From the IMG/VR virus record IMGVR_UViG_3300031963_000004, positions 62,001 to 126,000 of that record: DNA of 64,000 nt. One strand, 5' to 3'. The notes beneath the pieces are model-generated. The model was given only the letters and a program-made list of their open reading frames with translations. It was not told the DNA's origin and made no database searches. This document shows positions 43,001 to 58,503 of this stretch, piece by piece; positions within the stretch are counted from its first letter, which is position 1, and each line of letters opens with the position of its first letter. A program made the translations under genes and the position numbers.

Positions 43001-46000
43001 AAGATGCAGTATTCGCAGTTGATGCAGAAACAGCACAGTTTGGCGTAAATGTAACAGGATGTTCTCAACCAAATATTACAAGTGTAGGCACATTAATATC
43101 TCTTAAAGTTACAGGACAAATTGAAGCAGGAAGTATTGATGCTTCATTAGGTAATATTAAAGGTGCTAATTTCATTGGTGGTAATGTAAGTGGTAATATT
43201 TCAGGCACATTTAGAGCTCCAGGTGGGATAGCATCAAATACGGAAGTTCTTTTCAATAAAGAAGGAAATATCGGCGGAAGTGAAGGATTTAAATTTAATA
43301 GTTTAGTTAATTCGTTGACTATTACAGGTAAATTTAATTCTATTGATGCTAATTTAGGTAATCTAGTTGACGCAAACTTCTTTAGAGGTTCCGGTAATAA
43401 CTTAAGTAATATTCGTGGATCTAACGTTAACGGTGAGGTAGCGTTTGCTGCAACTGCAAATAGTGTAGCCGGTGCTAATGTTTCAGGTCAAGTAGCTAAT
43501 TCGTTAGTTGCAGGTACTGTTTACACTGCTGCACAACCAGCAATCACTAGTGTTGGTACATTGACTGACTTAAATGTTAATTCAGGAACCCTAGTAACAA
43601 GTAATCCAATAGACCTATTGCAAACATGGAATAACAGCAGTGTTGCATTTACTGGTATAAAACAAGTTGTTACTGATACACAAAGTTCAGCAGAATCATT
43701 ATTAATAGACCTACAACAAAACGTAGGTGGTGTAGCTACAAGTAGATTCAAAGTTAATAAAATAGGTAATCTTACTACAGGTAATGTTATTACTGGAAAC
43801 ATTGAGGGTACTATAATTACAGGTGCGCAACCTTTTATTACAAGCTTAGGTACACTATCAACATTAACTATATCTGCAAATATTCAATCAGGTAATGCTA
43901 ATTTAGGTAATCTAGCTAGAGCAAACTTCTTTAGTGGTGATGGCTCATTGTTAACAAATGTTCCTGCAGGTAACAGATTACAAAACGGTACAAGTAACTT
44001 GCAAATAGTTAACAATGGAAATATAAACATTGCTATTGATGGCACAAACGATGTCTTAACATTAGGAAACGTGTCTGGGGTCTACGTAGCTAACCTCAGA
44101 GGCAATCTACTTTCAGGTAATGCAAACTTAGGTAATTTAGTAACTGCAAATTTCTTTGCAGGAAACGCAAGTAATTTATTTAATATAGTTGGTGCTAATG
44201 TTACCGGTACAGTATCAAATGCAACTCATGCGTGTACAGCTAATACAGTAACAAATGCAACACAAACTAATATTACAAGATTGGGTACATTAACCGAACT
44301 TACACTATCAAGTATAGCAGACCCAAGCTTAGGTAATAATGTAACTGCAAGTTTCTTTACTGGTGTAATTACTCAAGCAGCATCAGCACAACCTAACATT
44401 ACAAGTGTAGGTAGATTGACTGGTCTAACAGTAGGAAATGCAACTGCAAACACTGTATTTGGTAACGGAACCATTACTGCTGCTGGAAATATTAGAGGTG
44501 CTAATATTGAGGGTAACCTAGTAGGCAATGGTAGTGGCATAACATACTTAAATGGTGGTGTAGTTAATGGTGATGTTCCGAGTGCTGCTACTGCTACTAC
44601 AGCAGGAACTGTACTTTCATCTTCACAACCAAATATAACAAGTGTTAATACTTCAAGTGGTTTAACATCATTAAAAGTTTCAGGCGAAACTGATTTAATA
44701 GGTAATGTAATAATTAGAAGTAATCTTACTGTACAAGGTACTACGATTACAGCTAATGCAACTACAATGAATGTTAGAGATCCTATTATACAAATAGGTG
44801 GGAATACGTCAGGTGGTGCGTTACCAAACGACGACGGAAAAGATAGAGGAATTTTACTACATTATCACAACGGAGTAACACCAGTTGATGGATTTATGGG
44901 TTGGGATAACGATTTAGAGCAATTTACTTTTGCTAGTAGAGTAAGTGTAACCAATGAAGTTGTTACATTCTCAGAATTAGGTAATATAAGAGCAAGTTAT
45001 TTCTTAGGTAACGGTTCTCAGTTAGAAGGTTTACCTCCACCAAACGAAATATTTAAAGGTACAAGTAATGTAAAAATTCCTGATTTAGACGGTAATGTAA
45101 CTATATCTGCAAACAGTGTTGCCAACATTGTACAAATACACGGTAATAGACCTAGTATAGGTAATGGAGTAATTGTTGCAGGTAATCTTACTGCAACAAG
45201 ATATTTTGGTGACGGAAGTCAATTAACGGGAGTAACAACAACAGCGATTTCCAATGGCACAAGTAATGTTACTTTTGCGGGTGCAGGTGGAAACATTACA
45301 ATGGCAGTTGGTGGCGTTTCTAATGTATTACAAATTGATAGTGTTGGTAACGTAGAGATAAAGGGTTTATTAAAAACAGGTACAGGTTCAGGTGGTAACA
45401 TTGCAGGTGCGAATGTAATTAGTGCAAATACATTTATCGGTAATTTAGCCAATGGTACAAGTAACATAAGAATTACACAAAATGGCAATGTCGGTATATC
45501 CTCTAACGGTGTATCAAATGCTGTAATAATTGCCGGTGGACTTGCTAATGTATTGACTGTAGCAGGTAATATTGATATTGGAAGTAATTGGTTTAGAGGT
45601 AACGGTGCGTTGTTAACTAGTTTACCAACTCCTACTTCTATGACTAACGGTACAAGCAACATTGTTGTTGGGTCAAGCACTGACGTAACTATTAGCGCAA
45701 ATGGTCAATCATCAATTATTGCCGTAAAAGGTAGCGGAACAGCGGGCGCAACTGGTGCAAATGTCAGTGGTTATCTTTCTGTATCCGGTATAATTACCTC
45801 AACAATTGCAACCGGCACAGCACCATTGACTGTAACAAGTACAACACGTGTTGCTAATTTAAACGTTAACTATGCAAACGTAAGTGACTTTAATGTAGTC
45901 ACCGCACAAACAACTGGAACATTATATCCTGCATTGATAAGTGGTGCTACTTCAGCAAATTATGCTTTAGGTGCAAACGCAGGTTTATCGTTTAATGCTG

Positions 46001-46524
46001 CAACTGGTGCATTGACTGCAAGTTCTTTTGTTGGTACAGCGACTGGACCATTGGCGAATGGTACAAGTAACGTCAGTATTGCATCAAGTGGCGGCAACGT
46101 AACTGTTAGTGCGGGCGGCACTGCAAACTTATTAACAGTTACAAGCACAGGTATATTAGGCACATTTGTAAATAGTTCGGATGTTATAAGAGATTACGCA
46201 ACTGTAAGTGTATCGCATGATTATAACCTAGCATCTGTTTTATATGTAAGTGGAGTTACTGGTGCATTGTCCTTAACATTCACAAATATTCCTACAACCA
46301 ATAGCAGGGCACTTGTTATTCCTGTTATTGTTGCACATGGTGCTACGGCTATGACTTATCCAACTTCAATATCAATCAACGGGGTAGGCGGACAAACAAT
46401 TAATTATTTACAAGGTACGACCCCAACTGCTAGAACTAACAAAACAGAAGTATTAGGATTAACATTAATTAGAACAGCTTCTAGTACATGGGTAGTTTTA
46501 GGTTTAGTTTCAAGTTACGGATAA
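40024..46524 (+). CDS. Giant repetitive tail-fibre/virion surface protein (2166 aa)
   Basis: N/T/G/S-rich; about 14 QPNITSVGTL repeats and 6 GTSN(V/I/L) repeats; late promoter at 39995-40000. Confidence 0.85.
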   Translation: MSWPANPVNGQRVQINGVLYEFNAANETWDRIGGYPDNFIVEFLQTPNLVVTGRATFTDAGNVKIQGGFANYVLVTDGSGNLSWQPQADVSAAGVNNEVQFNTNDALDSSASFTFDKTSNTLTVPRIASTLTTSAQPNITSVGTLTSLNVSGNATFSNNITANNFAGNFSGNFTGNYRSPGSNTELLFNNQSNIGASNKLTFDGTTLNVQGNVTATNANLGNLVTANFINSTLTVANQPNITRLGTLVNLTSSGNIVAPNFVGNIVGGNISGNFVAPGSNTHMLLNYQGNIAATSNITFADGLMNVAGNINAANITAVSDITATTLTGSLKTASQPNITSLGTLTGLNVTGNATISGNVTAANLRGNVIGGTITGTFSAPGNVTEVVYNKQGSLGTSSNFKFDNETLTVTGNTISGNVYANSGTIGASSIVGTIATANQTSITRVGTLVNAAVTGNVTAGNVYANMGTIGAGFLTGTLTTASQPNITSVGTITSLTVSGNSTSGNVYANSGTIGANRITGNHYTAPTNSSNTQILINNQGNITGSSNLTFNGTVLNVASNVNAANITASNVTATLFTGTLTTPSQPNVTSVGTLTSLNVGSNVDVANVLTANKIIANSIETDVILGQLTAPAGLAANNQVLFNLNGVVDSSSKLEFNPIGTATLTLNGNLTTGNANLGNRVTANYIQGSILPISSSQPNITTVGTLTGLGVDGPINIANSVITIDSNSYIVGNLIPVTSPTSATDTFTGDGVQTLFVLSVLPYPGDIVNITIDGVAENPLNYTILNKDLTFNTAPAVGAAIVVQMQLNTPIYDLGSPTARWRDLWLSGTTIKLGTATITSTDTGTIDTGGGEFQSEVLTSTATDIAPFIVYSNVMVGNLNVQYLHGYEPSTSNLANTIVLRDEFHNFEANVITARLEGNATRSNTVINPAQPNITSVGLLTHLDVDNKLTAANIELSSNISAEYFKGSGAELYNINGANVSEVPLATFATDAQDAVFAVDAETAQFGVNVTGCSQPNITSVGTLISLKVTGQIEAGSIDASLGNIKGANFIGGNVSGNISGTFRAPGGIASNTEVLFNKEGNIGGSEGFKFNSLVNSLTITGKFNSIDANLGNLVDANFFRGSGNNLSNIRGSNVNGEVAFAATANSVAGANVSGQVANSLVAGTVYTAAQPAITSVGTLTDLNVNSGTLVTSNPIDLLQTWNNSSVAFTGIKQVVTDTQSSAESLLIDLQQNVGGVATSRFKVNKIGNLTTGNVITGNIEGTIITGAQPFITSLGTLSTLTISANIQSGNANLGNLARANFFSGDGSLLTNVPAGNRLQNGTSNLQIVNNGNINIAIDGTNDVLTLGNVSGVYVANLRGNLLSGNANLGNLVTANFFAGNASNLFNIVGANVTGTVSNATHACTANTVTNATQTNITRLGTLTELTLSSIADPSLGNNVTASFFTGVITQAASAQPNITSVGRLTGLTVGNATANTVFGNGTITAAGNIRGANIEGNLVGNGSGITYLNGGVVNGDVPSAATATTAGTVLSSSQPNITSVNTSSGLTSLKVSGETDLIGNVIIRSNLTVQGTTITANATTMNVRDPIIQIGGNTSGGALPNDDGKDRGILLHYHNGVTPVDGFMGWDNDLEQFTFASRVSVTNEVVTFSELGNIRASYFLGNGSQLEGLPPPNEIFKGTSNVKIPDLDGNVTISANSVANIVQIHGNRPSIGNGVIVAGNLTATRYFGDGSQLTGVTTTAISNGTSNVTFAGAGGNITMAVGGVSNVLQIDSVGNVEIKGLLKTGTGSGGNIAGANVISANTFIGNLANGTSNIRITQNGNVGISSNGVSNAVIIAGGLANVLTVAGNIDIGSNWFRGNGALLTSLPTPTSMTNGTSNIVVGSSTDVTISANGQSSIIAVKGSGTAGATGANVSGYLSVSGIITSTIATGTAPLTVTSTTRVANLNVNYANVSDFNVVTAQTTGTLYPALISGATSANYALGANAGLSFNAATGALTASSFVGTATGPLANGTSNVSIASSGGNVTVSAGGTANLLTVTSTGILGTFVNSSDVIRDYATVSVSHDYNLASVLYVSGVTGALSLTFTNIPTTNSRALVIPVIVAHGATAMTYPTSISINGVGGQTINYLQGTTPTARTNKTEVLGLTLIRTASSTWVVLGLVSSYG
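41269..41560 (+). repeat. Three intragenic repeats at 132-bp (44-aa) period
   Basis: GGxAAyGTxTATGCTAAC starts at 41269, 41401 and 41533 (GNVYANxGTIGA). Confidence 0.8.
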
Positions 46525-46527
46525 TAT

Positions 46528-49500
46528 ATGGCAAGATTCGGTTCTACTGCGAGTACGTTTGGTTTAACTTTTTCAGGTAGTTTTACACCAACCTCGACTA
46601 TAACTCCTTCAGCTTCATCAGTCACAGAAAATAGTTCAGTAACTTTTACAATAACAAGCAATTTAATAAGTAAGACAATTAATTGGCGCATAGTTCATAG
46701 TAATACTACCAACGCTGATTTTTTAAACTCCATTGGATCTGGTACAGTTACTACAAATGGTTCAGGGGGAGCATCATTAGTTATAACACCTATTAATGAT
46801 TTACTCTTTCATGCTGCTCCAAAATCTTTCACAATTGTTTTAAGTTTTGAAAGCAAAGATATATCTACCAGTTCAAGCGTTACTATCATTGATGCTGCTA
46901 CTGTATCATTTAGTAGTCCACCCTCAAGTATTAATGAGGGAGTCACAACTACATTTAATGTTACTACGACTAGCCTCTCTAATACAACACTATATTGGAG
47001 TATAGATTTATCTGGTGGTATTACTGCAGGTGATTTTTCCGCCACTTCAGGTCCTTTTTCAATAACAAGTGGTTCAGGATCCTTCAGTATCACCACAACT
47101 CCTGATATGACAACAGAGGGAGGAGAAGCATTTGTATTAAGTATTAGAACTGGTAGCGTTACTGGTACTGTAAGAGCGCAAACTACTGTAAGTATTGCGG
47201 ACACAAGTCTTACAAGAACATATGCATTTGGTACTATACCAACATCTATTAACGAAGGTAATACAGGTATATTTAATGTTAATACTACAAATATACCTAA
47301 CAGTCCAACTACAACATTATACTGGACCATAGTTAATACTTCTACAACTAATCTAGATTTTTCAGCAACATCAGGTTTTTTCTCTATAACGAATAACGCA
47401 GGATCGTTTTCTATAACACCTACACTTGATATGACCAAAACCGGTGTTGAAAGTACAGAATCATTTTATGTGCAAATAAGAACAGATAGTACATCAGGTC
47501 CTGTTGTAGCCACAAGTAACAACGTGAATGTCGTTGATATGGTACCAACTTATTCCGTTGGTCCAAATGTAACTTCTGTAAATGAAGGTGGCACTGTTAC
47601 ATGGACAGTTACAACTAACCATGTTGTTAACGGTACTGTTTTATATTGGAGTGTCAACTTAGCGTTTGGTATGAGTGTTAGTGATTTATTAGACAATGCT
47701 AATGCGACAGGTTCTGTAACTATCAATGACAATATAGGCACTTTCACAACTACTTTAAGAAATGACCAATCCACAGAAGGATCAGAAACTCTTTATGTTT
47801 GGTTATGGACTGATTCGAACAAAACTCAAGGACAGCATGTCGCCCAAAGTATTAACGTTACAGTTACCGACTCAAGTACTGCAATTGTACCATTTGTAGA
47901 AGTTGGTTACACAATCTATCAAGATGTGACTAGTGCGACCTTTACGCAACCTGCAGGTTCTTCATCAGCATTTATCATTGCACAAGGAGGCGGCGGAGGT
48001 GGTGCAGGTGGTTACGCAGTTCCAAACTCTTACGCTGCTAGCGGTGGTGCAGGAGGCGGCGGCTCTGTGGTTAGAGCCTTAGTTAATTTACCTGCAGGTT
48101 CAACACTATCAGTATTTCCAGGAACAGGCGGTGCAGGTAGTTTAGCAGGTAGTACTACTGACGGCGCAGCCGGTGCACCATCCAGTTTAACTGGCACTGG
48201 TATTAGTATATACGCAGCTCCGGGCGGCGGTGGAAAAAATTATAATTTACGAACAGGTGGTGATGGTGGACAATCAATAACAAGTTCTGCAAGTGGAGCC
48301 AATGTAATTGATTTTGGCATAGTATATGGCAGTTCTGGTACTAGCGGCGTATATACTACGGGTTCATTTACTGCGAGTATTGATGGTGGTAGTAGTGCGA
48401 CTACTGCAGGTTCTGGAGTTTATTACCCAATTAGTGGTGGATTAGGAGGACCAGGAGGCGTTACCAATAGCAGTATGTTTGATGCTAAAAACGGAACTTA
48501 TGGTGACGGAGGAGGTGGCGGTGCTGCATACAAAACAACAGGCTCATCTTCATACGGTAGAGGAGGCAATGGAGGTAAAGGAACAGTTATTGTAGTATAT
48601 GGTAACGGTAATGGATTTACAGGAAACCAACCGCAATACACTATAAGTCCAAGTGCAACAACAATCAGTGAAGGACAATCAGTAGTGTTTACTGTAAATA
48701 CTACCAACGTAGCTAATGGCACAGTGTTGTATTGGGATAATGACGTAAACATGCCACATCCCTTCTTCACAACGTCTTTAGATCACACTCAATCAGGTAG
48801 TGTAAGTATAAGCAGTAACACTGCAAGTTTTACGTTAAGTATACCATATGACTCTGTTGATGATAACAATGATAGAATAAGTATAAGGCTATTTAGAGAT
48901 AGCGGAAGAAAATACATGGTTGCAAGGGCAAGTATTGTAACTATAGAAAATTTTGCACAATTAGCTCTAACTCAAAACTGGACTTCAATAACATTCAATC
49001 AAGGCACTGCTGTTACGAATGGACGACCATTTACACCAAGCGGAGGTAGCGGTTCTTATTGGATACTTCCAGACAGTTCCGCTGAAACTGCACTTTCAAA
49101 TGTAGGTTTATCGTGGGATCCTCTCACAGGAACAATAACAGGTACTCCTAATGCTGGCTTAACTGCCTTAACTTTTAATGTACTTTATACTTCAAGTACA
49201 AGTACCGCTAGTCAACAATTATCGAGAACAATAACAGTTAGTGTGGCTTCTGTAGGAGAGTTTACATTGACAGGCAGTCTTAATGACGTTACACAATCTT
49301 GGACAGTACCTGCAGGTGTTACTTCAATATCAATGGTTTGTATAGGCGGAGGGGGCGGGGCAGGCGCATTTGGTTTGCAATATAATACAGCAGGTACACT
49401 ACTTCGCAGATACGGAGGAGGTGCAGGTGGGGGTGGTGCTTTATCATATAGAAATAACTATTCAGTATCACCGGGTTCAACTTTAACTGTAACTGCTGGA

Positions 49501-50193
49501 AAATATGGATCTGGTGCAATAAGTTCTAGGTCAGGCGGCGGTACTGCTGTACCTGATAGATTGGGACCAGATGGTACTGCCGGCGGCACTAGTCAGATTG
49601 TCCTAGGAGCTACTACACTAGTTTCAGCGGGGGGAGGCGGTGCAGGACTCAGAAGCAACTTTTCAGTTAACACATCAGTAACAGGTGGAAGTGGTGGCAC
49701 AAGAAGTGCGATAACAGGTACAGCAGGTGGAAGTGGTGGTAAGGGAGGGAACGGCATTGGTGCTTCATCAGGCACAACTACAGGAATTAGCGGTGGAGAT
49801 GGCGGTGGTGGTGGTGCCGGTGGTTATAGTGGCAATGGTGGTGGAGGGGGAAATGGTAGCACATCTACAACGCAAGCCTCAGGTACAGCAGGCGCAGGCG
49901 GTGGCGGAGGAGGTGGCGCCGGTGGTAGAAATGCTACACCAAGTACAGGTGTTACGACAACTGGAGGCGGAGCTGGCGGAGGTGTTGGTGCATTAGGTAC
50001 TGGTACAAATGGCACTGCCGGGACTTCAACTACACCTAACGGCGGTGGCGGATCGGGAGGTGCTTCAGGTGGACCAAGTGGTGTTGGTGGCAACTATGGT
50101 GCAGGTGGTAACCAAGGTGGTAGAGGTGGACCAGGTTATGTAAGAATTATTTGGCCGGGAACTACAAGAACTTTCCCTAGTGCAGCAACTTAA
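46528..50193 (+). CDS. Virion adhesin/fibre with Calx-beta-like Ig repeats and Gly-rich domains (1221 aa)
   Basis: Five S(V/I)xEG/EN...F(T/N)V modules; two GGGGGG-rich domains, the second starting SWTVPAGVTSISMVCIGGGG. Confidence 0.8.
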   Translation: MARFGSTASTFGLTFSGSFTPTSTITPSASSVTENSSVTFTITSNLISKTINWRIVHSNTTNADFLNSIGSGTVTTNGSGGASLVITPINDLLFHAAPKSFTIVLSFESKDISTSSSVTIIDAATVSFSSPPSSINEGVTTTFNVTTTSLSNTTLYWSIDLSGGITAGDFSATSGPFSITSGSGSFSITTTPDMTTEGGEAFVLSIRTGSVTGTVRAQTTVSIADTSLTRTYAFGTIPTSINEGNTGIFNVNTTNIPNSPTTTLYWTIVNTSTTNLDFSATSGFFSITNNAGSFSITPTLDMTKTGVESTESFYVQIRTDSTSGPVVATSNNVNVVDMVPTYSVGPNVTSVNEGGTVTWTVTTNHVVNGTVLYWSVNLAFGMSVSDLLDNANATGSVTINDNIGTFTTTLRNDQSTEGSETLYVWLWTDSNKTQGQHVAQSINVTVTDSSTAIVPFVEVGYTIYQDVTSATFTQPAGSSSAFIIAQGGGGGGAGGYAVPNSYAASGGAGGGGSVVRALVNLPAGSTLSVFPGTGGAGSLAGSTTDGAAGAPSSLTGTGISIYAAPGGGGKNYNLRTGGDGGQSITSSASGANVIDFGIVYGSSGTSGVYTTGSFTASIDGGSSATTAGSGVYYPISGGLGGPGGVTNSSMFDAKNGTYGDGGGGGAAYKTTGSSSYGRGGNGGKGTVIVVYGNGNGFTGNQPQYTISPSATTISEGQSVVFTVNTTNVANGTVLYWDNDVNMPHPFFTTSLDHTQSGSVSISSNTASFTLSIPYDSVDDNNDRISIRLFRDSGRKYMVARASIVTIENFAQLALTQNWTSITFNQGTAVTNGRPFTPSGGSGSYWILPDSSAETALSNVGLSWDPLTGTITGTPNAGLTALTFNVLYTSSTSTASQQLSRTITVSVASVGEFTLTGSLNDVTQSWTVPAGVTSISMVCIGGGGGAGAFGLQYNTAGTLLRRYGGGAGGGGALSYRNNYSVSPGSTLTVTAGKYGSGAISSRSGGGTAVPDRLGPDGTAGGTSQIVLGATTLVSAGGGGAGLRSNFSVNTSVTGGSGGTRSAITGTAGGSGGKGGNGIGASSGTTTGISGGDGGGGGAGGYSGNGGGGGNGSTSTTQASGTAGAGGGGGGGAGGRNATPSTGVTTTGGGAGGGVGALGTGTNGTAGTSTTPNGGGGSGGASGGPSGVGGNYGAGGNQGGRGGPGYVRIIWPGTTRTFPSAAT

Positions 50194-50486: not shown

Positions 50487-50546
50487 ACTATAACTATTAA
50501 ATATTTATTGCAAATGAATATTTTTTATTTAAAGGAGACACACAGT

Positions 50547-51572
50547 ATGAAAAAGGTATTTGCATTATTAACCTTAATGGTTTCACAAGTCGCAATGTCA
50601 GCAGAATTTACTGGGGCAGGTGCGACTTTTCCATATCCGATTTACGCAAAGTGGGCAGAAGCTTATAAAGCACAAACTGGGATAGGATTGAATTATCAGA
50701 GCATTGGTAGTGGTGGCGGTATTCGTCAAATCAAAGCAAAAACAGTTGACTTTGGTGCAAGTGATATGCCATTAAAACCAGAAGAACTTGAGAAAGAAGG
50801 ACTAGTGCAATTTCCAGCTATCATAGGTGGAGTTGTTCCAGTTGTAAACTTAGATGGTATACAAGGTGGTCAACTAAAATTAACAAGTGATGTTATTGCT
50901 AACATACATTTAGGTAAAATTACTAAATGGAATGACAAAGCTATTGCCGAAATAAATCCTGGAGTTACATTACCTGCATTAAATATCACAGTCGTACATC
51001 GTGCAGATGGATCAGGTACAACATTTATTTGGACAAATTATCTAAGCAAAGCAAACGCAGACTTTCAAAAAACAGTAGGCGAGGGCACAGCAGTTAAATG
51101 GCCAGTAGGTGTAGGTGGTAAAGGTAATGAAGGTGTAGCAGCGCAAGTTCAGCGCATCAAAGGTGCTTTTGGTTATGTAGAATATGCATATGCTAAAAGA
51201 AACAAAATCGCACATACGCAATTAAAAAATCGTGATGGCAATTTTATTCAACCAGATGACAGTACATTCAAAGCAGCAACAGCTAATGCAGACTGGAATA
51301 ATGCTCCTGGCATGTACTTATTATTAACTTGGCAAACAGGCAAAGACGCATGGCCTGCAACTGGCGCAAGTTTTATTCTAATGCACAAACAACAAGCAGA
51401 TGCATTAACTGGTCGTGCTATTTTGAAATTCTTTGATTGGAGTTACAAAAATGGTAGCAAGATGAGTGAAGAATTAGAATATGTTCACTTACCACAGTCA
51501 GTTATTAAGTTGATACAAGAAAACTGGCGCCGTGACTTCAAAGGTCCAGATGGTAACGCAATTTGGAAATAA
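50547..51572 (+). CDS. pstS: Phosphate ABC transporter substrate-binding protein PstS
   Basis: Signal peptide, GAGATFPYP, GSGGG, DFGASD, RADGSGTT, GKGNEGV; AGGAG SD before ATG at 50547. Confidence 0.96.
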   Translation: MKKVFALLTLMVSQVAMSAEFTGAGATFPYPIYAKWAEAYKAQTGIGLNYQSIGSGGGIRQIKAKTVDFGASDMPLKPEELEKEGLVQFPAIIGGVVPVVNLDGIQGGQLKLTSDVIANIHLGKITKWNDKAIAEINPGVTLPALNITVVHRADGSGTTFIWTNYLSKANADFQKTVGEGTAVKWPVGVGGKGNEGVAAQVQRIKGAFGYVEYAYAKRNKIAHTQLKNRDGNFIQPDDSTFKAATANADWNNAPGMYLLLTWQTGKDAWPATGASFILMHKQQADALTGRAILKFFDWSYKNGSKMSEELEYVHLPQSVIKLIQENWRRDFKGPDGNAIWK

Positions 51573-51581
51573 GGGAAAATC

Positions 51582-52988
51582 ATGAAAAAATTTGCAAAAT
51601 TAAGTATTATATTAGCATTAGCAACTGCAATACCTGCTTTTGCTGATGAGTACAAAGAAACATTAAGTATTCTTAGAGATAAAGGCATTCTTACACAACA
51701 AGAGTATAATTCTAAACTCCAAGCATATGAAGAAAGAGAAGAAAACAAAAAGTTTGCAGAACAAAGAATCGACAAAGATGTTAGCGATAACAACAAGTGG
51801 AGACAAGCTAGAGCAAACGATGGTTCAGTTACCGAAAACGGGATCGGACTCAAAAGTAAAGATGGAAACAATACCATCCAACTTACAGGTAGACTTCATA
51901 TGGACTATCGTCAGTACGACCCCGCTTATGGTGCAGGTCAAACCACAGATTCGTATCAGAACCTAGCAGAAGTTCGTCGTGCTAGATTTGGTGTACGTGG
52001 ACAGTTCGCCAAAGACTTTAGATATCAGTTACTTGCTAACTTCGGCAATGAAGTAGGTGCCTCTGCAACTACTACAACAGCAGATGAAATGTGGGTAAAC
52101 TATGCTGCTAATCCTGAAATGCAATTTCAGTTTGGTTTGTTTAAAATGCCTTTTAGTTTAGAACAATTAACAAGCTCTAACAATATTGATTTTATGGAGC
52201 GTAGTTTAATTGGTAATACTGATGGTGAGTTTATACCAGGAAAAGAAACTGGCTTTATGTTACATGGTATTCCTAAGCCTGGTCTACTCTATCAAGTAGC
52301 ACTAAGCCGTGGTCGTGCTAACAAAGATGCATCTAATGATGGCTTTGATTACATCGGTCGTGTTGTAACAAACGTAGCCGAATTACAAGGTAGCAAAGCA
52401 TATGTATTACACTTAGGTGCAGCATATAGCACAGGCGAAGTTAAAGGTGGTGTTACACCAGCAAGCGGTAGAACAGAATCACGCAGTCAATCAGCATGGT
52501 TCACAGGTCCAGCGTTAAGTGGTACTACTACAAGAACACGCCAAGGTCTTGAAGCAGCATTTGCTTATAATGGTCTAAAGGTACAAGGTGAACAGTTCCA
52601 ATTCAATTATGATCCTACTACAGGTAACGATCAGAAAATAAATGGATACTATGTGCAAGCTTTGTATAACTTGACAGGCGAAAGTCACAACTACAAAGAT
52701 GGTATCTTTAATTGGATCAAACCTAACAACCCAACTGATAAAGGTGGTAAGGGTGCATGGCAGGTAGGTGTGCGTATCAGCGAGTTTGATGCTAGTGATA
52801 TTACTGTAGTTACTGGCAAATCAAATCGTGCTACTGCTATGACTTATGGAGTTACTTGGTTCTGTACAGATAATCTACGCTTTATGTTAAACTACGTAGA
52901 CACAAAGTTTGACAGTCTTGTAGGTAGCTCAGGTAGTCGTGTAAACGGTGACAGAGCAATCATGTTCAGGAGTCAGTTAAGCTTCTAA
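51582..52988 (+). CDS. Phosphate-selective outer-membrane porin, OprO/OprP family
   Basis: Signal peptide, coiled-coil leader, VRRARFGVRG, GLFKMPFSLEQLTSSN, FMERS, terminal QLSF; co-transcribed with pstS. Confidence 0.88.
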   Translation: MKKFAKLSIILALATAIPAFADEYKETLSILRDKGILTQQEYNSKLQAYEEREENKKFAEQRIDKDVSDNNKWRQARANDGSVTENGIGLKSKDGNNTIQLTGRLHMDYRQYDPAYGAGQTTDSYQNLAEVRRARFGVRGQFAKDFRYQLLANFGNEVGASATTTTADEMWVNYAANPEMQFQFGLFKMPFSLEQLTSSNNIDFMERSLIGNTDGEFIPGKETGFMLHGIPKPGLLYQVALSRGRANKDASNDGFDYIGRVVTNVAELQGSKAYVLHLGAAYSTGEVKGGVTPASGRTESRSQSAWFTGPALSGTTTRTRQGLEAAFAYNGLKVQGEQFQFNYDPTTGNDQKINGYYVQALYNLTGESHNYKDGIFNWIKPNNPTDKGGKGAWQVGVRISEFDASDITVVTGKSNRATAMTYGVTWFCTDNLRFMLNYVDTKFDSLVGSSGSRVNGDRAIMFRSQLSF

Positions 52989-53883: not shown

Positions 53884-54084
53884 TCAACCACCGGGTGAAT
53901 TGTAATATTTAATGTAGATACATCTTGGACTTACTCTGTAACCATCTGTATACCAAGTAGCCCTGATTCTTTCTTTTTCACGCATACATGTTTCGTAACT
54001 AGGCTGAGGAGCCTGTATAACTCCCTGACTTTGTGTAAAGCCATAAGATTGTGGCAAATACATACTGATAATGAGAATCCACAT
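53884..54084 (-). CDS. Small Cys-pair protein (family A)
   Basis: MWILIISM...PSYETC...C; TAAATA at 54090-54095. Confidence 0.6.
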   Translation of the reverse strand: MWILIISMYLPQSYGFTQSQGVIQAPQPSYETCMREKERIRATWYTDGYRVSPRCIYIKYYNSPGG

Positions 54085-54101
54085 ACTATTATTTAGTTAA
54101 A

Positions 54102-54123
54102 AATAGGGACCGAAGTCCCTATT
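54102..54123 (-). terminator. tmRNA terminator
   Basis: Minus strand aatagggac-ttcg-gtccctatt followed by a U-run. Confidence 0.85.
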
Positions 54124-54124
54124 A

Positions 54125-54433
54125 CTATTTTTGGTAACAAGGGATAGTTCCCCCGGAGATCATGCTGCTAGAGCAAAAACCTCATCGTTAGCTGCGTTTG
54201 CAGTTATAATTTTGCTTGATTTACGGTCATCGCCTACCGTGCTGTCCACTCGCCTACTCTTGACCCTGTCGAAACCATGTCTGGCCCATCAAAAGCAAGT
54301 TGGAGCTACTTATTATACCAACATTCAGGAACCGTAGCGGCCGCACAGTATCCGAAGCCATTTGCTTTTGGTGGACCAGGCGGGAGTCGAACCCGCGTCC
54401 AGAACCCTTTTGGGGTTGCTTCATACAGCAATA
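54125..54433 (-). ncRNA. ssrA: tmRNA, circularly permuted two-piece gene
   Basis: Acceptor piece ends GGACGCGGGTTCGACTCCCGCCTGGTCCACCA (3' end at 54369). An 81-nt intervening segment follows. The coding piece starts GGGCCAG at 54287; G3.U70 pair present; tag ORF 54201-54160 reads ANAANDEVFALAA-stop. Outer ends are approximate. Confidence 0.93.
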
Positions 54434-54439
54434 ACCTGT

Positions 54440-54468
54440 AGTTTATATTTATTCGGAAAGATTGTCAA
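54440..54468 (-). promoter_or_regulatory. Sigma70 promoter of ssrA (a TAAATA lies within the spacer)
   Basis: TTGACA-atctttccgaataaata-TAAACT. Confidence 0.75.
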
Positions 54469-54472
54469 CAAA

Positions 54473-54667
54473 TTAGGGTTTCTTAACTTGTTGTTCGGGC
54501 ACACAAAATGCGGTCATGTTTGGTCTATTGTGTGTGATGCTACGTGCGACTTCTAAACATTCTTCCATTCTGTCAAATGTTTTCCATTGACTTTCATGGA
54601 TATGTCCTGAGATAATAACAGCAACAATTAATACATAATTCACATATAATTCCCGGTTATATGTCAT
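54473..54667 (-). CDS. Small Cys-pair protein (family A)
   Basis: YVLIVAVII...FDRMEEC...C; start uncertain (an internal GTG is possible). Confidence 0.55.
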   Translation of the reverse strand: MTYNRELYVNYVLIVAVIISGHIHESQWKTFDRMEECLEVARSITHNRPNMTAFCVPEQQVKKP

Positions 54668-54834: not shown

Positions 54835-57800
54835 TTACGGGTATAAATTATCGTAGTACTCTTTGATCCAAGCCCAGTCATAGGTTAATCTTAGTTTCTC
54901 AAAGTCACCCTTAACACTTTCATAATACTTGACCGCTTCGTTTGCACCCTTCAAGCAATATTCGCTGTATTCTCCGGTAGCCACGGTAAGCCAAATGTCA
55001 AGTCTTTCTTTGTTTTCTTCAGATCCTATAGTTTCTACGCTATGCTTAAGTTTGACTACTTCTCTAAAAGCAGTTCTCCAAGTATCCCATTTGCTTGTAT
55101 TAAACCGACTAATCCCTGAATTAATATTAACAACTTCGTGTTCACTGTCAAGTGTAAAGTCTAGACCCTTAACAATAGTATTAAGTGTCAACTTTTTATT
55201 GTTGGCGACAATAGCTTGGTGACCATATTCTAATCCATTTAATGGGTTAGTAGCAGTAAAGATATAATGCTTTGGTATCTGTAATCTATCTGGTTGCCAA
55301 TCAAAATTAAAATCTTCATTGACTTTAAGCTTTGCGTTCACTAAGAAATACCAAGGTGTGTTTGACATTCTAGCTGCTTCATGTTGACTAGCTACACGAC
55401 CTTTAATACCATCAACACCTACTACTATGTTAGGCAAGTCTTTTGCTATATTCAACAGATGTTCGTAGTTTTCTTCCGCGCAAGCTTCACCATTACTAAA
55501 GAAAACAATATCTAATGGTTTGCTTTGCGATAATTTTTTACTTGTGATTATATATGGATAATCGTAAATTTCTTTCTTAACAAACTTACTTGTTTCTTTG
55601 GGAGCAATGATTCTACTTGCACCTGTACTTGTGATTATAACAGTTTTATCTTCTGCTTTCCATAATGACATTGTATCAATATCTTCATGCCTCATGTTTT
55701 TATTATCTGCTGTAATAAGAACTTGATATGGAAAGTCTACTTGATTGTGAATGCTATTAACCAAAGTATCATCATCTACTATAGTAACAGGAGCAGGCAA
55801 TCTTGGAACTGATTGCTCACCTTTAAAATTTATTTCAGGGTAATCATCTAACTTTTTAATAATTGGTAAAAACATTCTTAATTCATTCACATTTACTAAG
55901 AATGTGTCACCGAACTTTTGATTATTACTAGCAAACACATACATCTGTTCGCTTGTACCTGTATCAAACGTCTGAGTAAAATCAAAATTACTATAATCAC
56001 AAATTGAACTACATATCCAAATATAATGCTCGTTCTTAGTAGGCAATGATTCTACAATAGAAAAGAACGTCTGATAGTAATCTGTGTCGTGTGGGATAAC
56101 TGTGATATTTCTGTTTGGAACTCTGTCTTTTAAAGTTTCTAAACAAGTGTGTTGATTGCCAAAATCAATTAGATAAATGTCATGCAATGATTCTTTTATC
56201 TTAGCCTCTTTGTTAACAAAGTTTAGCATAGACATATCTTCAAGTAGTTTATCTTTTTTATATTCAATAAGATATGAATCCTTATTTACAAGATAAGTGT
56301 AACCCCACTGAGTCCATTGGGTCTTAAATACGTGAAGCATTCTTGTTTGCCAAATACTAGGATAGTAGTTAAAATCAAAATCAGCATAATCAATCTCGCT
56401 ACTTAAAACCCAAAACAGTTTAGTTTTAGACTTGTTGGCACAACTAGCAATTACTTCAGCCCAGCCGTTAGCGAATCTTGTTTTCTTTATTTGAGGAAAC
56501 TTTTCTTGTAGTATTTCAAAATTTTCTAAACTATCCTTATTCATTCTATCAATATAAAACATATCTAGTTTAGAATCTACATCAATTTCTAGTTCAGAAA
56601 CATAATTATACTGTATTTTTTCTTTACAGTGTTTTTCAATAACAAAGTACGTCTGTAGGTCTAGGCTCTCTTTGTTTCCAAAAACATGCACATATGGGGA
56701 TTCATAATCTTCGGGTTCCCAACTAAAATCAAACTTGTCGTAATTTAATTCAGCGTTTAGGGCCCAAAACATTTCATCAGGATGTTGTTTAATTAAATCC
56801 TCAAGTGTAGTTTCAATATAATATTTTTTGATGTTTTTGTTAATTAATTTTACAATAGGATTAGCAACAAACTTTGTCTGCGTTGCACCTTCTATTTTAT
56901 ATTCTAACACATATTTTAAATTATCTCTATACTCATTTTTGACTCCAAATTTGTAGATATAGGGAGGGTCTCTATCATCATGATGCCAACTATAATCGAA
57001 TAAAATTTCATCAGTAGTTAACTTTGTAAATCTTGATTCATCCGGCAATTTGATTGCTGCTTGAAATGTTTGATATTTAATACCTTCATAATCAGCAACC
57101 ACATAAACAGGACCACCCGTATTTTGCCATTGTGTGCCAAACATATGTAAGTAAGGTTCGTCTTTTCTTGGTTCCCAACTGAAATCAAACTTACTTACAT
57201 CTAGACCTTTAGGCACTGCCCAAAAATTATCTTCAGGGAATTCATTTATTAAATCATCTAAATCGGTTTCAATATAATGAATTACCGTATCAGATGATTT
57301 TTTTGCTATCTGAAATGTTTGATATTTTACTCCCATATAATTAGGAACGATAAGTGCAGGTCCTGCATCTTGATTCCATTGCGTACCAAACTGATGTAAA
57401 TACGGAGGTTCTCCTATAGGAGGTTCCCAACTATAATCAAAATCTTCATCATTTAAATTTTCAGGTACTACCCAAAAAGTTTCAGTTCTATGTTCAGATA
57501 TTATTTTTTGTAACGTATTAATTTTATCTAATGTATATTTTTTAAGTGGTATTTTAGCTGCTAAAGGATAATCATGATACTTGTAACCTTTATTAGAAGG
57601 TACTACATATGCAGGTCCATCTGATGTATTAAATCTCGTACCGAATTGATGAATATAAGGAGGGTCATATCTGTTAGGTACCCACGTAAAATCAAATGAT
57701 TCTTTGTCTATATTGTTAGGTACTGCCCAAAATGCATCACTAGGATATTCGTAAATTAAATCCTCAACTGTCGTAGTATCATCTATTTCATAAATAGGAA

Positions 57801-58503
57801 CCATACACTTTCGTAATGCTTTTTGACTTTGCTGATACTTAGTACCTTGATTATTCGGTACTACATAGCAAGGTCCTCCATCAGAGTCCCATTGTGTTCC
57901 AAATACATGAACATATGGAGGTTCATGTTTATTCGGCATCCAACCAAAGTCAAAGTTTGATACATCTACGTTAACAGGCACAGCCCAAAATTCTGTATCA
58001 AAGTATAAGCTAACTAACTCTTTGAATTCTTTTTGAGAGGAAAATGTAAGGATAGGAGGAATTTTATATTTTAAGTCTATTGAAATATACTTTTGTTTTT
58101 CAGCGCCCTCTACATGATATTCTGCAACAATTTTTTCTTCTTCATCTATTGAACCAATAAAAATATACACGAAGGGTTCTTCAGTGTCATCAGGATGCCA
58201 GCTAAAGTCAAAATCTAATTTATCATTTTTAATAAAAAAGTTTTCTTTATGTTGCAAATGTCTTACTGTTTGAAAGTCATGGTACTTAACACCTTCACTT
58301 TCGGGAATTACAAACTTAGGTCCGCCAGTTTTCTGCCATTGTGTTCCAAACTGATGCGTATAAGGTCTGTCATAGTAACTAGGTCTCCATGAAAAGTCAA
58401 AGCCCTCAGTATCAACATTATCGGGGATAACCCAATAACCTTGTTCCCATAACTTAATTCTTTCTTCTATATCGTAATCTTTTTGTTCTACCATCATGAA
58501 CAC
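54835..58503 (-). CDS. 1222-aa protein with about 11 FDF(S)WxP repeats and a C-terminal glycosyltransferase-like domain
   Basis: Repeats read from the translation; the C-terminal ~230 aa are homologous to the 63173..64000 protein. Confidence 0.75.
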   Translation of the reverse strand: MFMMVEQKDYDIEERIKLWEQGYWVIPDNVDTEGFDFSWRPSYYDRPYTHQFGTQWQKTGGPKFVIPESEGVKYHDFQTVRHLQHKENFFIKNDKLDFDFSWHPDDTEEPFVYIFIGSIDEEEKIVAEYHVEGAEKQKYISIDLKYKIPPILTFSSQKEFKELVSLYFDTEFWAVPVNVDVSNFDFGWMPNKHEPPYVHVFGTQWDSDGGPCYVVPNNQGTKYQQSQKALRKCMVPIYEIDDTTTVEDLIYEYPSDAFWAVPNNIDKESFDFTWVPNRYDPPYIHQFGTRFNTSDGPAYVVPSNKGYKYHDYPLAAKIPLKKYTLDKINTLQKIISEHRTETFWVVPENLNDEDFDYSWEPPIGEPPYLHQFGTQWNQDAGPALIVPNYMGVKYQTFQIAKKSSDTVIHYIETDLDDLINEFPEDNFWAVPKGLDVSKFDFSWEPRKDEPYLHMFGTQWQNTGGPVYVVADYEGIKYQTFQAAIKLPDESRFTKLTTDEILFDYSWHHDDRDPPYIYKFGVKNEYRDNLKYVLEYKIEGATQTKFVANPIVKLINKNIKKYYIETTLEDLIKQHPDEMFWALNAELNYDKFDFSWEPEDYESPYVHVFGNKESLDLQTYFVIEKHCKEKIQYNYVSELEIDVDSKLDMFYIDRMNKDSLENFEILQEKFPQIKKTRFANGWAEVIASCANKSKTKLFWVLSSEIDYADFDFNYYPSIWQTRMLHVFKTQWTQWGYTYLVNKDSYLIEYKKDKLLEDMSMLNFVNKEAKIKESLHDIYLIDFGNQHTCLETLKDRVPNRNITVIPHDTDYYQTFFSIVESLPTKNEHYIWICSSICDYSNFDFTQTFDTGTSEQMYVFASNNQKFGDTFLVNVNELRMFLPIIKKLDDYPEINFKGEQSVPRLPAPVTIVDDDTLVNSIHNQVDFPYQVLITADNKNMRHEDIDTMSLWKAEDKTVIITSTGASRIIAPKETSKFVKKEIYDYPYIITSKKLSQSKPLDIVFFSNGEACAEENYEHLLNIAKDLPNIVVGVDGIKGRVASQHEAARMSNTPWYFLVNAKLKVNEDFNFDWQPDRLQIPKHYIFTATNPLNGLEYGHQAIVANNKKLTLNTIVKGLDFTLDSEHEVVNINSGISRFNTSKWDTWRTAFREVVKLKHSVETIGSEENKERLDIWLTVATGEYSEYCLKGANEAVKYYESVKGDFEKLRLTYDWAWIKEYYDNLYP

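What the first reader, a model, noticed from the sequence alone, without database searches (positions are those of the whole stretch)
54102..54468. Circularly permuted two-piece tmRNA gene in a phage
On the minus strand the CCA-bearing acceptor piece comes first, then an 81-nt spacer closed by AAAAGCAA/TTGCTTTT, then the coding piece. The acceptor stem GGGCCAG/CTGGTCC has the G3.U70 alanine determinant and an encoded CCA. A complete promoter and UUCG terminator flank the gene. Permuted tmRNAs are known from alphaproteobacteria, some cyanobacteria and a betaproteobacterial lineage (Dechloromonas); standard tRNA-oriented annotation easily misses them. It is a self-contained trans-translation RNA that relies on host SmpB, RNase P and AlaRS.
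Basis: partly seen in the sequence, partly recalled or inferred. Interest (0 to 1): 0.78.

Follow-up and report, generated by a model that had tools for sequence, protein, structure and literature searches.

The report
Permuted tmRNA gene in jumbo phage
An uncultured freshwater jumbo phage carries a complete, circularly permuted (two-piece) ribosome-rescue RNA gene of the betaproteobacterial type; the gene is real and probably functional, but permuted tmRNA genes in phages have already been reported.

Summary
ARAGORN calls a permuted tmRNA at 54069-54461(-) with tag ANAANDEVFALAA. Rfam gives 134.9 bits for tmRNA_permuted (cut-off 47) and 134.6 bits for beta_tmRNA (cut-off 84). The order is acceptor piece with encoded CCA, 81-nt spacer, coding piece, and G3.U70 is present. 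A TTGACA-17-TAAACT promoter and a UUCG-loop terminator flank the gene.

The window lies in a 223-kb IMG/VR virus record (36.5% GC, about 63% complete). It has terminase, UvsX, gp32-like SSB, DnaB and primase genes, but no tRNA, SmpB or integrase gene.

At least 119 other viral contigs share the exact 32-nt T-arm/acceptor sequence, and nearly all carry a full permuted gene. Across 82 unique sequences, the helix joining the two pieces is kept by compensatory changes. 40 of 46 distinct tags end in LAA. Freshwater metatranscriptome contigs cover both pieces and neither flank.

This is a new member of a known kind. Buchholz et al. 2022 counted 53 two-piece tmRNAs in phage genomes, and Stenotrophomonas phages carry annotated beta-type ones. 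The host and the bacterial donor were not determined.

By-catch: in some relatives, not here, the spacer encodes a conserved small hydrophobic peptide.

The parts
54440..54468 (-). sigma-70-like promoter: -35 TTGACA (54468-54463), 17-nt spacer, -10 TAAACT (54445-54440); predicted start near 54433
   Evidence: 10 of 12 consensus matches. The beta_tmRNA model aligns its own promoter segment here. Function is inferred.
54369..54430 (-). acceptor piece: P2 5' strand (UGCUG at 54430-54426, then GGUUCUG), T-arm 54396-54380, acceptor 3' strand CUGGUCC 54379-54373, discriminator A 54372, encoded CCA 54371-54369
   Evidence: Rfam alignment. The 32-mer at 54400-54369 recurs exactly in at least 119 viral contigs. 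RNA contigs cover 54359-54412 and some end at 54369.
54288..54368 (-). 81-nt intervening sequence, removed on maturation; its ends pair (AAAGCAA / UUGCUUU) and the helix stacks on the acceptor stem; it has no Shine-Dalgarno sequence and no contained ORF
   Evidence: length; fold; a closing helix of 8-15 bp is general in relatives. Depth is zero at 54305-54358 in the deepest RNA run, but one low-depth RNA contig spans it.
54099..54287 (-). coding piece: acceptor 5' strand GGGCCAG 54287-54281 (G3.U70), D-loop analogue, P2 3' strand, PK1 hairpin 54239-54223, tag frame, 3' hairpins, terminator
   Evidence: Covariation in P2 and PK1. RNA contigs cover 54133-54304.
54160..54201 (-). tag reading frame: resume codon GCA at 54201, 13 codons encoding ANAANDEVFALAA, stop TGA at 54162-54160
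   Evidence: The same tag occurs in 13 of 113 related genes, and 40 of 46 distinct tags end in LAA. Relative to the beta consensus there is an in-frame 9-nt insertion (alignment).
54099..54123 (-). intrinsic terminator: stem AAUAGGGAC / GUCCCUAUU with UUCG loop (54123-54102), then a U run; the hairpin can act in both directions
   Evidence: It aligns to the terminal hairpin of the beta_tmRNA model.

Best explanation
This is a functional two-piece (circularly permuted) tmRNA gene of the betaproteobacterial structural type, carried by a large, apparently lytic freshwater phage.

Proposed mechanism:
1. One precursor of about 335 nt is transcribed from the sigma-70-like promoter to the UUCG-loop terminator.
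2. The two acceptor strands pair, extended by the closing helix of the 81-nt spacer.
3. Host RNase P cuts 5' of G54287, and host 3'-processing enzymes trim the spacer back to the encoded CCA at 54369.
4. This leaves an acceptor piece of about 62-65 nt and a coding piece of about 185 nt, held together by the acceptor stem and the long P2 helix.
5. Host AlaRS charges the RNA through G3.U70.
6. Host SmpB and EF-Tu deliver it to stalled ribosomes, which resume on GCA at 54201 and append (A)ANAANDEVFALAA, a ClpXP-type degron.

The likely benefit to the phage is to keep ribosome rescue and turnover of truncated proteins running during infection, when truncated mRNAs accumulate or host tmRNA supply falls.

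Shown here: the gene anatomy, family membership, phage context, conservation with covariation, and RNA-library coverage confined to the gene. Inferred from established tmRNA biology (Keiler, Shapiro and Williams 2000 for Caulobacter two-piece tmRNA, cited in PMC9004378): the processing sites, charging, SmpB dependence and the benefit to the phage.
For: - Detectors: ARAGORN tmRNA* with a tag frame; RF04321 at 134.9 bits against a cut-off of 47, and RF01850 at 134.6 bits against 84, both full length.
- Anatomy: G3.U70, discriminator A and encoded CCA; promoter and terminator; spacer helix stacked on the acceptor stem.
- Phage context: TerL, UvsX, SSB, DnaB and primase; virus record; an identical 14-kb region in a second assembly, L042; present in at least 14 freshwater DNA runs.
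- Selection on structure: in 82 unique related genes, P2 pairs switch UA/AU/GC, UA/CG and CG/UA/UG with 75-82 of 82 canonical, the PK1 hairpin switches UA/CG/GC, and G3.U70 is kept in 81 of 82.
- Tags: 46 distinct tags, 40 ending in LAA.
- RNA: metatranscriptome contigs map only to 54133-54411. In the deepest run both pieces are covered, the spacer has zero depth and the flanks are silent.
- No integrase gene, so an attP remnant is unlikely.
- Precedent: permuted tmRNAs in cultured phages.
Against: - No experiment on this RNA exists.
- The RNA evidence comes from assembled contigs at 90% or higher likeness. Conserved parts could therefore come from related phages or bacteria. One low-depth contig spans the spacer, which could be precursor or DNA carry-over.
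- The host is unknown, so compatibility with its SmpB and AlaRS is assumed.
- The record is about 63% complete, so a phage SmpB cannot be excluded.
- Part of the middle of P2 aligns poorly to the beta model in this sequence (non-canonical marks).
- The benefit to the phage is conjecture.
Confidence: 0.8

Rival explanations
1. The gene is a passenger: a recently captured or decaying copy of a bacterial two-piece ssrA gene, or an attachment-site remnant, with no role in the phage life cycle.
For: Phages and genomic islands often integrate into ssrA and carry fragments of it (PMC9004378; PMC4383910, listed). tmRNA genes are uncommon in phages, at 2.3% of genomes.
Against: The gene is complete and has its own promoter and terminator. 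No integrase gene was found in 223 kb. The gene is conserved in at least 119 viral contigs, with compensatory changes in P2 and PK1 and degron-like tags maintained. It keeps the same neighbourhood (PstS, porin, 66-aa ORF) in about a dozen relatives. Its exact 32-nt acceptor sequence occurs in only 2 contigs among about 185,000 bacterial species genomes, which argues against recent capture.
Confidence: 0.06
2. The RNA works mainly as a competitor or re-programmer. It would displace the host tmRNA from SmpB and ribosomes, either to change which tag is added or to damp host trans-translation, rather than simply to supplement rescue.
For: A phage tRNA-like-domain-only tmRNA (mycobacteriophage DS6A) inhibits host tmRNA (PMC4131195; PMC11915505). 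Phage tmRNA types need not match the host's: Melnitz carries an alpha-type gene in a beta host, and beta-type genes occur in Stenotrophomonas phages. Some relatives have unusual tags of 20-33 aa. This tag carries three extra residues (ANA) before the canonical ANDEVFALAA.
Against: The tag frame is intact and ends in the canonical ALAA degron, as do 40 of 46 tags in the family. This is what an ordinary rescue-and-degrade tmRNA looks like. Nothing here shows inhibition.
Confidence: 0.12
3. The gene is an assembly chimera or bacterial contamination, a bacterial ssrA locus wrongly joined to phage DNA.
For: The record is a metagenomic assembly. The gene type is named after bacteria.
Against: The gene lies at position 116 kb of a 223-kb contig, between phage-family genes. 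An independent assembly, L042, is 100% identical across the gene and both flanks. Many DNA runs hold the stretch. Related genes sit in other large viral contigs with shared neighbours.
Confidence: 0.01

Closest known systems
Betaproteobacterial two-piece tmRNA (Rfam RF01850 beta_tmRNA; Dechloromonas lineage, Sharkady and Williams 2004, as cited in PMC9004378)
   Same: - Same gene order: promoter, acceptor piece, spacer, coding piece, terminator.
- Full-length match at 134.6 bits.
- Same tRNA-like domain, P2 and PK1 hairpin, same post-tag motif CCUUGUUACCAAA and same terminal hairpin.
- The tag core ANDEVFALAA resembles the model consensus ANDEHFAMAA.
   Different: - Carried by a phage, not a bacterium.
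- The spacer is about 50 nt longer than in the model (71 versus 19 unaligned positions).
- The acceptor stem sequence differs (GGGCCAG versus consensus GGGggUG).
- The CCA is fully encoded.
- The tag has a 9-nt in-frame insertion.
- 36.5% GC context.
- No bacterial example could be retrieved for direct comparison.
Permuted tmRNA genes of cultured phages: Stenotrophomonas phages Marzo, Moby and Mendera (Menderavirus), Xanthomonas XacN1, Caulobacter phiCbK-like phages, cyanophages, Pelagibacter HTVC008M, Methylophilales phage Melnitz
   Same: - Phage-borne two-piece tmRNA genes found by ARAGORN.
- Marzo's gene is also beta-type (94.6 bits).
- Large phages, many of them aquatic.
   Different: - Only the tRNA-like part aligns to cultured-phage genes, at 77-83% identity over 13-17% of the query.
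- Melnitz's gene is alpha-type and follows a glutamine riboswitch. No riboswitch was found anywhere in this window.
- In Marzo the gene sits in a tRNA cluster. This record has no tRNA gene at all.
One-piece tmRNAs of phages (mycobacteriophage Bxz1 group, Bacillus phage G) and tmRNAs of huge phages (Al-Shayeb et al. 2020)
   Same: A phage-encoded ribosome-rescue RNA in a large genome.
   Different: Those described in PMC4131195 are standard, non-permuted genes. Some huge phages also encode SmpB, but none was found here.
Mycobacteriophage DS6A tRNA-like-domain-only tmRNA
   Same: A phage-borne tmRNA relative with a chargeable tRNA-like domain.
   Different: DS6A lacks a tag frame and acts as an inhibitor. 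The gene here has a complete tag frame with a canonical degron.

Membership tests
Permuted (two-piece) tmRNA, Rfam RF04321 | Covariance-model score above the curated cut-off over the full model | tested here: met
   134.9 bits against a cut-off of 47, model positions 1-213 of 213, E 2.9e-26; the same result on the whole record.
Permuted (two-piece) tmRNA, Rfam RF04321 | Circularly permuted order: the 3' half of the tRNA-like domain with CCA lies upstream of the 5' acceptor strand and the tag frame, separated by an intervening sequence | tested here: met
   CCA at 54371-54369, 81-nt spacer, GGGCCAG at 54287-54281, tag frame 54201-54160.
Permuted (two-piece) tmRNA, Rfam RF04321 | Alanine identity elements: 7-bp acceptor stem with G3.U70 and discriminator A | tested here: met
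   GGGCCAG pairs with CUGGUCC, and A is at 54372. G3.U70 is kept in 81 of 82 unique relatives.
Permuted (two-piece) tmRNA, Rfam RF04321 | Tag reading frame with an Ala resume codon, a stop codon and a hydrophobic C-terminal degron | tested here: met
   GCA resume codon, tag ANAANDEVFALAA, TGA stop. 40 of 46 family tags end in LAA.
Permuted (two-piece) tmRNA, Rfam RF04321 | A long-range helix (P2) joining the two pieces, supported by covariation | tested here: met
   RNAalifold consensus over 82 unique sequences. Examples of pair types: UA 51 / AU 21 / GC 5; UA 49 / CG 31; CG 56 / UA 17 / UG 9; UA 62 / CG 19.
Permuted (two-piece) tmRNA, Rfam RF04321 | The precursor is processed into two RNA pieces | tested here: inconclusive
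   In RNA run X18 both pieces are covered, the spacer (54305-54358) has zero depth, and some contigs end at 54369. However, these are assembled contigs at 90% or higher likeness, and one contig in X15 spans the spacer.
Permuted (two-piece) tmRNA, Rfam RF04321 | Alanylation by AlaRS, SmpB binding and trans-translation activity | not testable with these tools
   These need biochemistry or genetics. No SmpB gene was found in the record.
Betaproteobacterial subtype, Rfam RF01850 | Score above the cut-off, including the clade-specific 5' and 3' regions (promoter segment, post-tag hairpin, terminal hairpin) | tested here: met
   134.6 bits against a cut-off of 84, model positions 1-331 of 331. It was the best match within its clan, and a lower-scoring overlapping clan match was dropped.
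Betaproteobacterial subtype, Rfam RF01850 | Descent from, or residence in, a betaproteobacterial genome | tested here: not met
   The gene resides in a phage. Its exact 32-nt acceptor sequence is in only 2 contigs of about 185,000 species genomes, and neither is a betaproteobacterial chromosome. No bacterial beta-type gene was found in 151 plus 401 sampled genomes of the class, so its ancestry is untested.

The most novel reading that the evidence does not exclude
The gene belongs to a large clade of beta-type two-piece tmRNAs that is maintained by viruses, not to a set of sporadic captures from hosts.

- The clade has an invariant 32-nt T-arm/acceptor sequence shared by at least 119 viral contigs.
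- That sequence is essentially absent from about 185,000 bacterial species genomes.
- The gene travels with a phosphate-uptake module (PstS plus an OprO/P-type porin) in freshwater jumbo phages.
- In this clade the spacer has repeatedly become a coding slot for small proteins, so in some members one transcript yields a two-piece tmRNA and an mRNA.

If so, the 'betaproteobacterial' permuted tmRNA may be as much a phage lineage as a bacterial one, and transfer between phage and host could run in either direction.
Probability: 0.3. Interest if true: 0.6.

Novelty: new member of a known kind. Interest (0 to 1): 0.35.

Why it matters
It adds a well-documented example to the still small set of phage-encoded ribosome-rescue RNAs: complete anatomy, covariation support and a hint of expression. 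It also shows that the beta-type permuted form is common in uncultured freshwater phages.

Phage tmRNAs bear on how large phages keep the host translation apparatus working during takeover. This phage has no tRNA genes yet keeps a tmRNA, which suggests that ribosome rescue, rather than codon supply, is the function under selection here.

The family-level observations give concrete material for testing why the permuted form persists and whether phages spread it. These observations are the invariant tRNA-like domain, the near-absence of that sequence from bacterial reference genomes, and the peptide genes inside the spacer.

Tried and rejected
1. **Internal promoter in the spacer.** TGGTATAAT is an extended -10 at about 54320-54312. 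It occurs only in this phage and its identical twin L042, not in 81 other unique spacers, and the promoter scan did not list it. Rejected as a conserved feature.

2. **Bacterial comparators and host.**
- An E. coli record gives no taxonomic centre.
- The NCBI assembly holding a related phage contig is not held.
- A centre was finally reached by going from E. coli SmpB to Paramixta and then to G153.
- RF01850 found nothing in 151 genomes of that class, and a permuted-order pattern found nothing in 401.
- A Clostridia-like class gave 0 of 151 over the cut-off, as expected.
- No tree against bacterial genes could be built, and the host remains unknown.

3. **Host clue from the neighbouring porin.** The top 120 homologues are 80-99% identical, and those inspected are all phage contigs, so no bacterial donor was seen.

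4. **Phage SmpB and integrase.** Neither was found in the 223 kb.

5. **Riboswitch upstream, as in Melnitz.** No Rfam family other than the two tmRNA models reaches its cut-off anywhere in the window.

6. **ORFs overlapping the gene** (54254-54424(-), 54131-54337(+) and others). They have no Shine-Dalgarno sequence and lie inside a structured RNA, so they were treated as spurious.

7. **Literature on ORFs inside tmRNA spacers.** Nothing relevant was found in the held library. The Sharkady and Williams 2004 paper is not held.

Full report
**1. The observation**

Read on the minus strand, the region contains, in order:
- a TTGACA-17-TAAACT promoter (54468-54440);
- a stretch ending in a T-arm, the strand CUGGUCC, a discriminator A and an encoded CCA (54371-54369);
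- an 81-nt spacer (54368-54288, length computed);
- GGGCCAG (54287-54281), followed by a 13-codon frame (54201-54160);
- a hairpin with a UUCG loop and a U run (54123-54099).

GGGCCAG pairs with CUGGUCC and gives G3.U70. The spacer ends pair with each other, and in the predicted fold that helix stacks on the acceptor stem.

**2. More than chance**

ARAGORN reports one gene in the whole window: a permuted tmRNA at 54069-54461(-) with tag ANAANDEVFALAA. Rfam gives two full-length matches. One is tmRNA_permuted RF04321 at 134.9 bits (cut-off 47, E 2.9e-26). The other is beta_tmRNA RF01850 at 134.6 bits (cut-off 84, E 6.8e-41). The beta model also aligns the clade-specific parts: the promoter segment, the post-tag motif CCUUGUUACCAAA and the terminal hairpin. 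The gene is therefore of the betaproteobacterial structural type.

Relative to that model, the spacer is about 50 nt longer and the tag carries an in-frame 9-nt insertion. The insertion puts ANA in front of a canonical ANDEVFALAA.

**3. Context**

The window is bases 62001-126000 of a 223,151-bp IMG/VR virus record, linear and about 63% complete by CheckV. The whole record is 36.5% GC. It has no tRNA gene and only this tmRNA. It has no SmpB gene and no tyrosine integrase gene.

The window encodes a large terminase, a UvsX-like recombinase, a gp32-like SSB, a DnaB helicase, a primase and virion proteins. The terminase is about 50% identical to those of jumbo myophages: Pseudomonas PA5oct, Sinorhizobium Phosso and Agrobacterium Atu_ph07.

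Beside the tmRNA lie a PstS phosphate-binding protein, an OprO/P-type phosphate porin, a GATase-like protein and a carbamoyltransferase.

A second assembly (L042) is 100% identical across the gene and about 14 kb of flanks. At least 14 freshwater or lake DNA runs hold the stretch. The gene is therefore genuinely part of an uncultured freshwater jumbo phage, not a chimera.

**4. Relatives**

ARAGORN finds a complete permuted tmRNA in nearly all of them; the failures are genes cut by contig ends. All those sampled are beta-type by Rfam, at 87-134 bits.

About a dozen relatives also have PstS and the porin next to the gene, and several share the 66-aa ORF downstream. The porin's 120 best homologues are 80-99% identical, and the ones inspected lie on phage contigs of up to 352 kb.

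The same 32-mer occurs in only two contigs among about 185,000 bacterial species genomes:
- One is a short contig with a permuted tmRNA and a suppressor-type tRNA. It looks like a mis-binned phage contig.
- The other carries a standard one-piece tmRNA.

**5. Selection on structure and tag**

I aligned 82 unique core sequences: the acceptor piece plus the first 130 nt of the coding piece. RNAalifold recovers the T-arm, the acceptor stem and the long P2 helix that joins the two pieces.

The P2 pairs change on both sides while staying paired:

| Pair types observed | Counts |
|---|---|
| UA / AU / GC | 51 / 21 / 5 |
| UA / CG | 49 / 31 |
| CG / UA / UG | 56 / 17 / 9 |
| UA / GC / UG / CG | 55 / 10 / 7 / 4 |
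| UA / CG | 62 / 19 |

The PK1 hairpin also covaries (UA 35, CG 22, GC 5). G3.U70 is kept in 81 of 82 sequences. The T-arm and the acceptor 3' strand are invariant by the way the set was collected, so they say nothing.

Among 113 genes there are 46 distinct tags. Thirty begin with AND and 40 end in LAA. This is the signature of working proteobacterial tmRNAs.

**6. Expression**

Assembled contigs from four freshwater metatranscriptomes, at 90% identity or higher, map only to 54133-54411. Both flanks are empty.

In the deepest run the coding piece reaches a word depth of about 2100 and the acceptor piece about 400. The central spacer (54305-54358) has none, and two contigs end exactly at the A of CCA. 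This is what a processed two-piece RNA would give.

It is not proof, for three reasons. Contigs are not reads. Conserved segments may come from related phages or bacteria. And a 158-nt contig in another run spans the spacer with three differences, which could be precursor or DNA carry-over.

**7. Mechanism**

From the anatomy and established tmRNA biology, the most likely course is as follows. A single precursor is transcribed and folded so that the spacer helix extends the acceptor stem. RNase P cuts 5' of G54287, and the 3' end is trimmed to the encoded CCA. Host AlaRS alanylates the RNA through G3.U70. Host SmpB and EF-Tu deliver it to stalled ribosomes. Translation resumes on GCA and adds a ClpXP-type degron.

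The phage supplies only the RNA. The gain to the phage, continued ribosome rescue during takeover, is inferred. The alternatives (passenger gene, competitor of host tmRNA, assembly artefact) are weighed in the rival explanations, and all rank well below.

**8. Comparison with what is known**

Permuted tmRNAs are known from Alphaproteobacteria, a betaproteobacterial lineage and Cyanobacteria (PMC11915505; PMC9004378).

In phages:
- Buchholz et al. 2022 described the two-piece gene of Melnitz. They counted 53 two-piece genes among 133 unique phage tmRNAs, 50 of them from aquatic phages.
- Their table lists Stenotrophomonas, Xanthomonas, Caulobacter, Synechococcus and Pelagibacter phages.
- Stenotrophomonas phage Marzo carries an annotated permuted gene that is beta-type.
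- Huge phages with tmRNA and SmpB were reported by Al-Shayeb et al. 2020.

The finding is therefore a new member of a known kind. To cultured-phage genes it matches only over the tRNA-like part, at 77-83% identity.

**9. What could not be settled**

I could not retrieve any bacterial beta-type gene for a tree. The covariance model found none in 151 evenly drawn genomes of the GTDB class that contains the former Betaproteobacteria. A permuted-order pattern found none in 401. Bacterial carriers are therefore a small minority of that class.

Both the origin of the phage clade and the host remain open. The contrast between abundance in viral contigs and rarity in bacterial reference genomes is suggestive, but it rests on one exact 32-mer and on samples.

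**10. By-catch**

Spacers in the family range from 31 to 405 nt, and nearly all begin a closing helix of 8-15 bp directly after CCA.

In 15 unique relatives the spacer opens with a Shine-Dalgarno sequence and a start codon. In 10 of these the ORF ends at the TGA one base before GGGCCAG.

One family encodes 23-24-aa hydrophobic peptides. Two of its members differ at 15 nucleotides, 11 of them at third codon positions, giving 11 synonymous and 2 non-synonymous codon changes. This indicates real coding sequence.

The window's own spacer has no such ORF. I found no description of this in the held literature.

**11. Verdict**

The feature is ordinary in kind but well preserved. Interest is moderate to low for the gene itself and somewhat higher for the family-level patterns.

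Noticed in passing
relatives only: L009, L060, L078, L122, L022 (23-24 aa); L026, L070 (25 aa); L112, L032, L020, L023 (49-122 aa). Each lies between CCA and GGGCCAG of its tmRNA gene.: In some related phage tmRNA genes the spacer begins with a Shine-Dalgarno sequence (TAAGGAG) and ATG, and it encodes a small protein whose TGA stop lies one base before the coding piece. The hydrophobic 23-24-aa family shows mostly synonymous change (11 synonymous against 2 non-synonymous codons between L009 and L060). The Shine-Dalgarno sequence sits in the closing helix. This is not present in this window.
   Followed up: partly
window 54369-54400 (-); L003-L121; L122, L123: The exact 32-nt T-arm/acceptor/CCA sequence is shared by at least 119 IMG/VR contigs. 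It occurs in only 2 contigs among about 185,000 bacterial species genomes. One of those looks like a mis-binned phage contig with a suppressor-type tRNA(cta), and the other carries a standard one-piece tmRNA.
   Followed up: partly
window 50508-51572 (+) and 51582-52988 (+): The phage encodes PstS and an OprO/P-type phosphate-selective porin side by side. The pair adjoins the tmRNA in about a dozen relatives. The porin has over 100 homologues at 80-99% identity, and the ones inspected lie on phage contigs of up to 352 kb. A phage-borne outer-membrane phosphate porin is an unusual auxiliary gene.
   Followed up: partly
whole record G000 (223,151 bp): This jumbo phage fragment has no tRNA gene at all but keeps a tmRNA, unlike many large phages that carry tRNA arrays.
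   Followed up: no
L017, L058, L060, L069, L098, L113, L025, L077, L120: Some related phage tmRNAs have long predicted tags of 20-33 aa, for example ANADTFDFTALNFTGNTVANDSRFALAA. These look like a canonical tag preceded by an extension. L025 and L049 have atypical tags that do not end in LAA.
   Followed up: no
window 54312-54320 (-): The spacer contains TGGTATAAT, an extended -10 motif that could in principle drive separate transcription of the coding piece. It is not conserved in any other spacer.
   Followed up: yes
window 53884-54084 (-) and 54473-54667 (-): Small ORFs of 66 and 64 aa flank the tmRNA gene on the same strand. The 66-aa ORF is conserved downstream of the tmRNA in L025, L097, L039, L044 and L004 at 68-79% identity. 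Neither has a family match.
   Followed up: no
L002 (Stenotrophomonas phage Marzo, MZ326868.1 70852-71422): Marzo's annotated permuted tmRNA overlaps the 3' end of tRNA-Leu and the 5' end of tRNA-Thr within a tRNA cluster. ARAGORN also makes a doubtful second, standard tmRNA call there.
   Followed up: no
window 40024-46524 (+), 46528-50193 (+), 54835-58503 (-): Very large ORFs of 2166, 1221 and 1222 aa lie near the gene and have little or no family assignment: a weak tail-fibre hit, a glycine-rich domain and none, respectively. The 1222-aa protein recurs next to the tmRNA in L033, L108, L059, L101 and L037.
   Followed up: no
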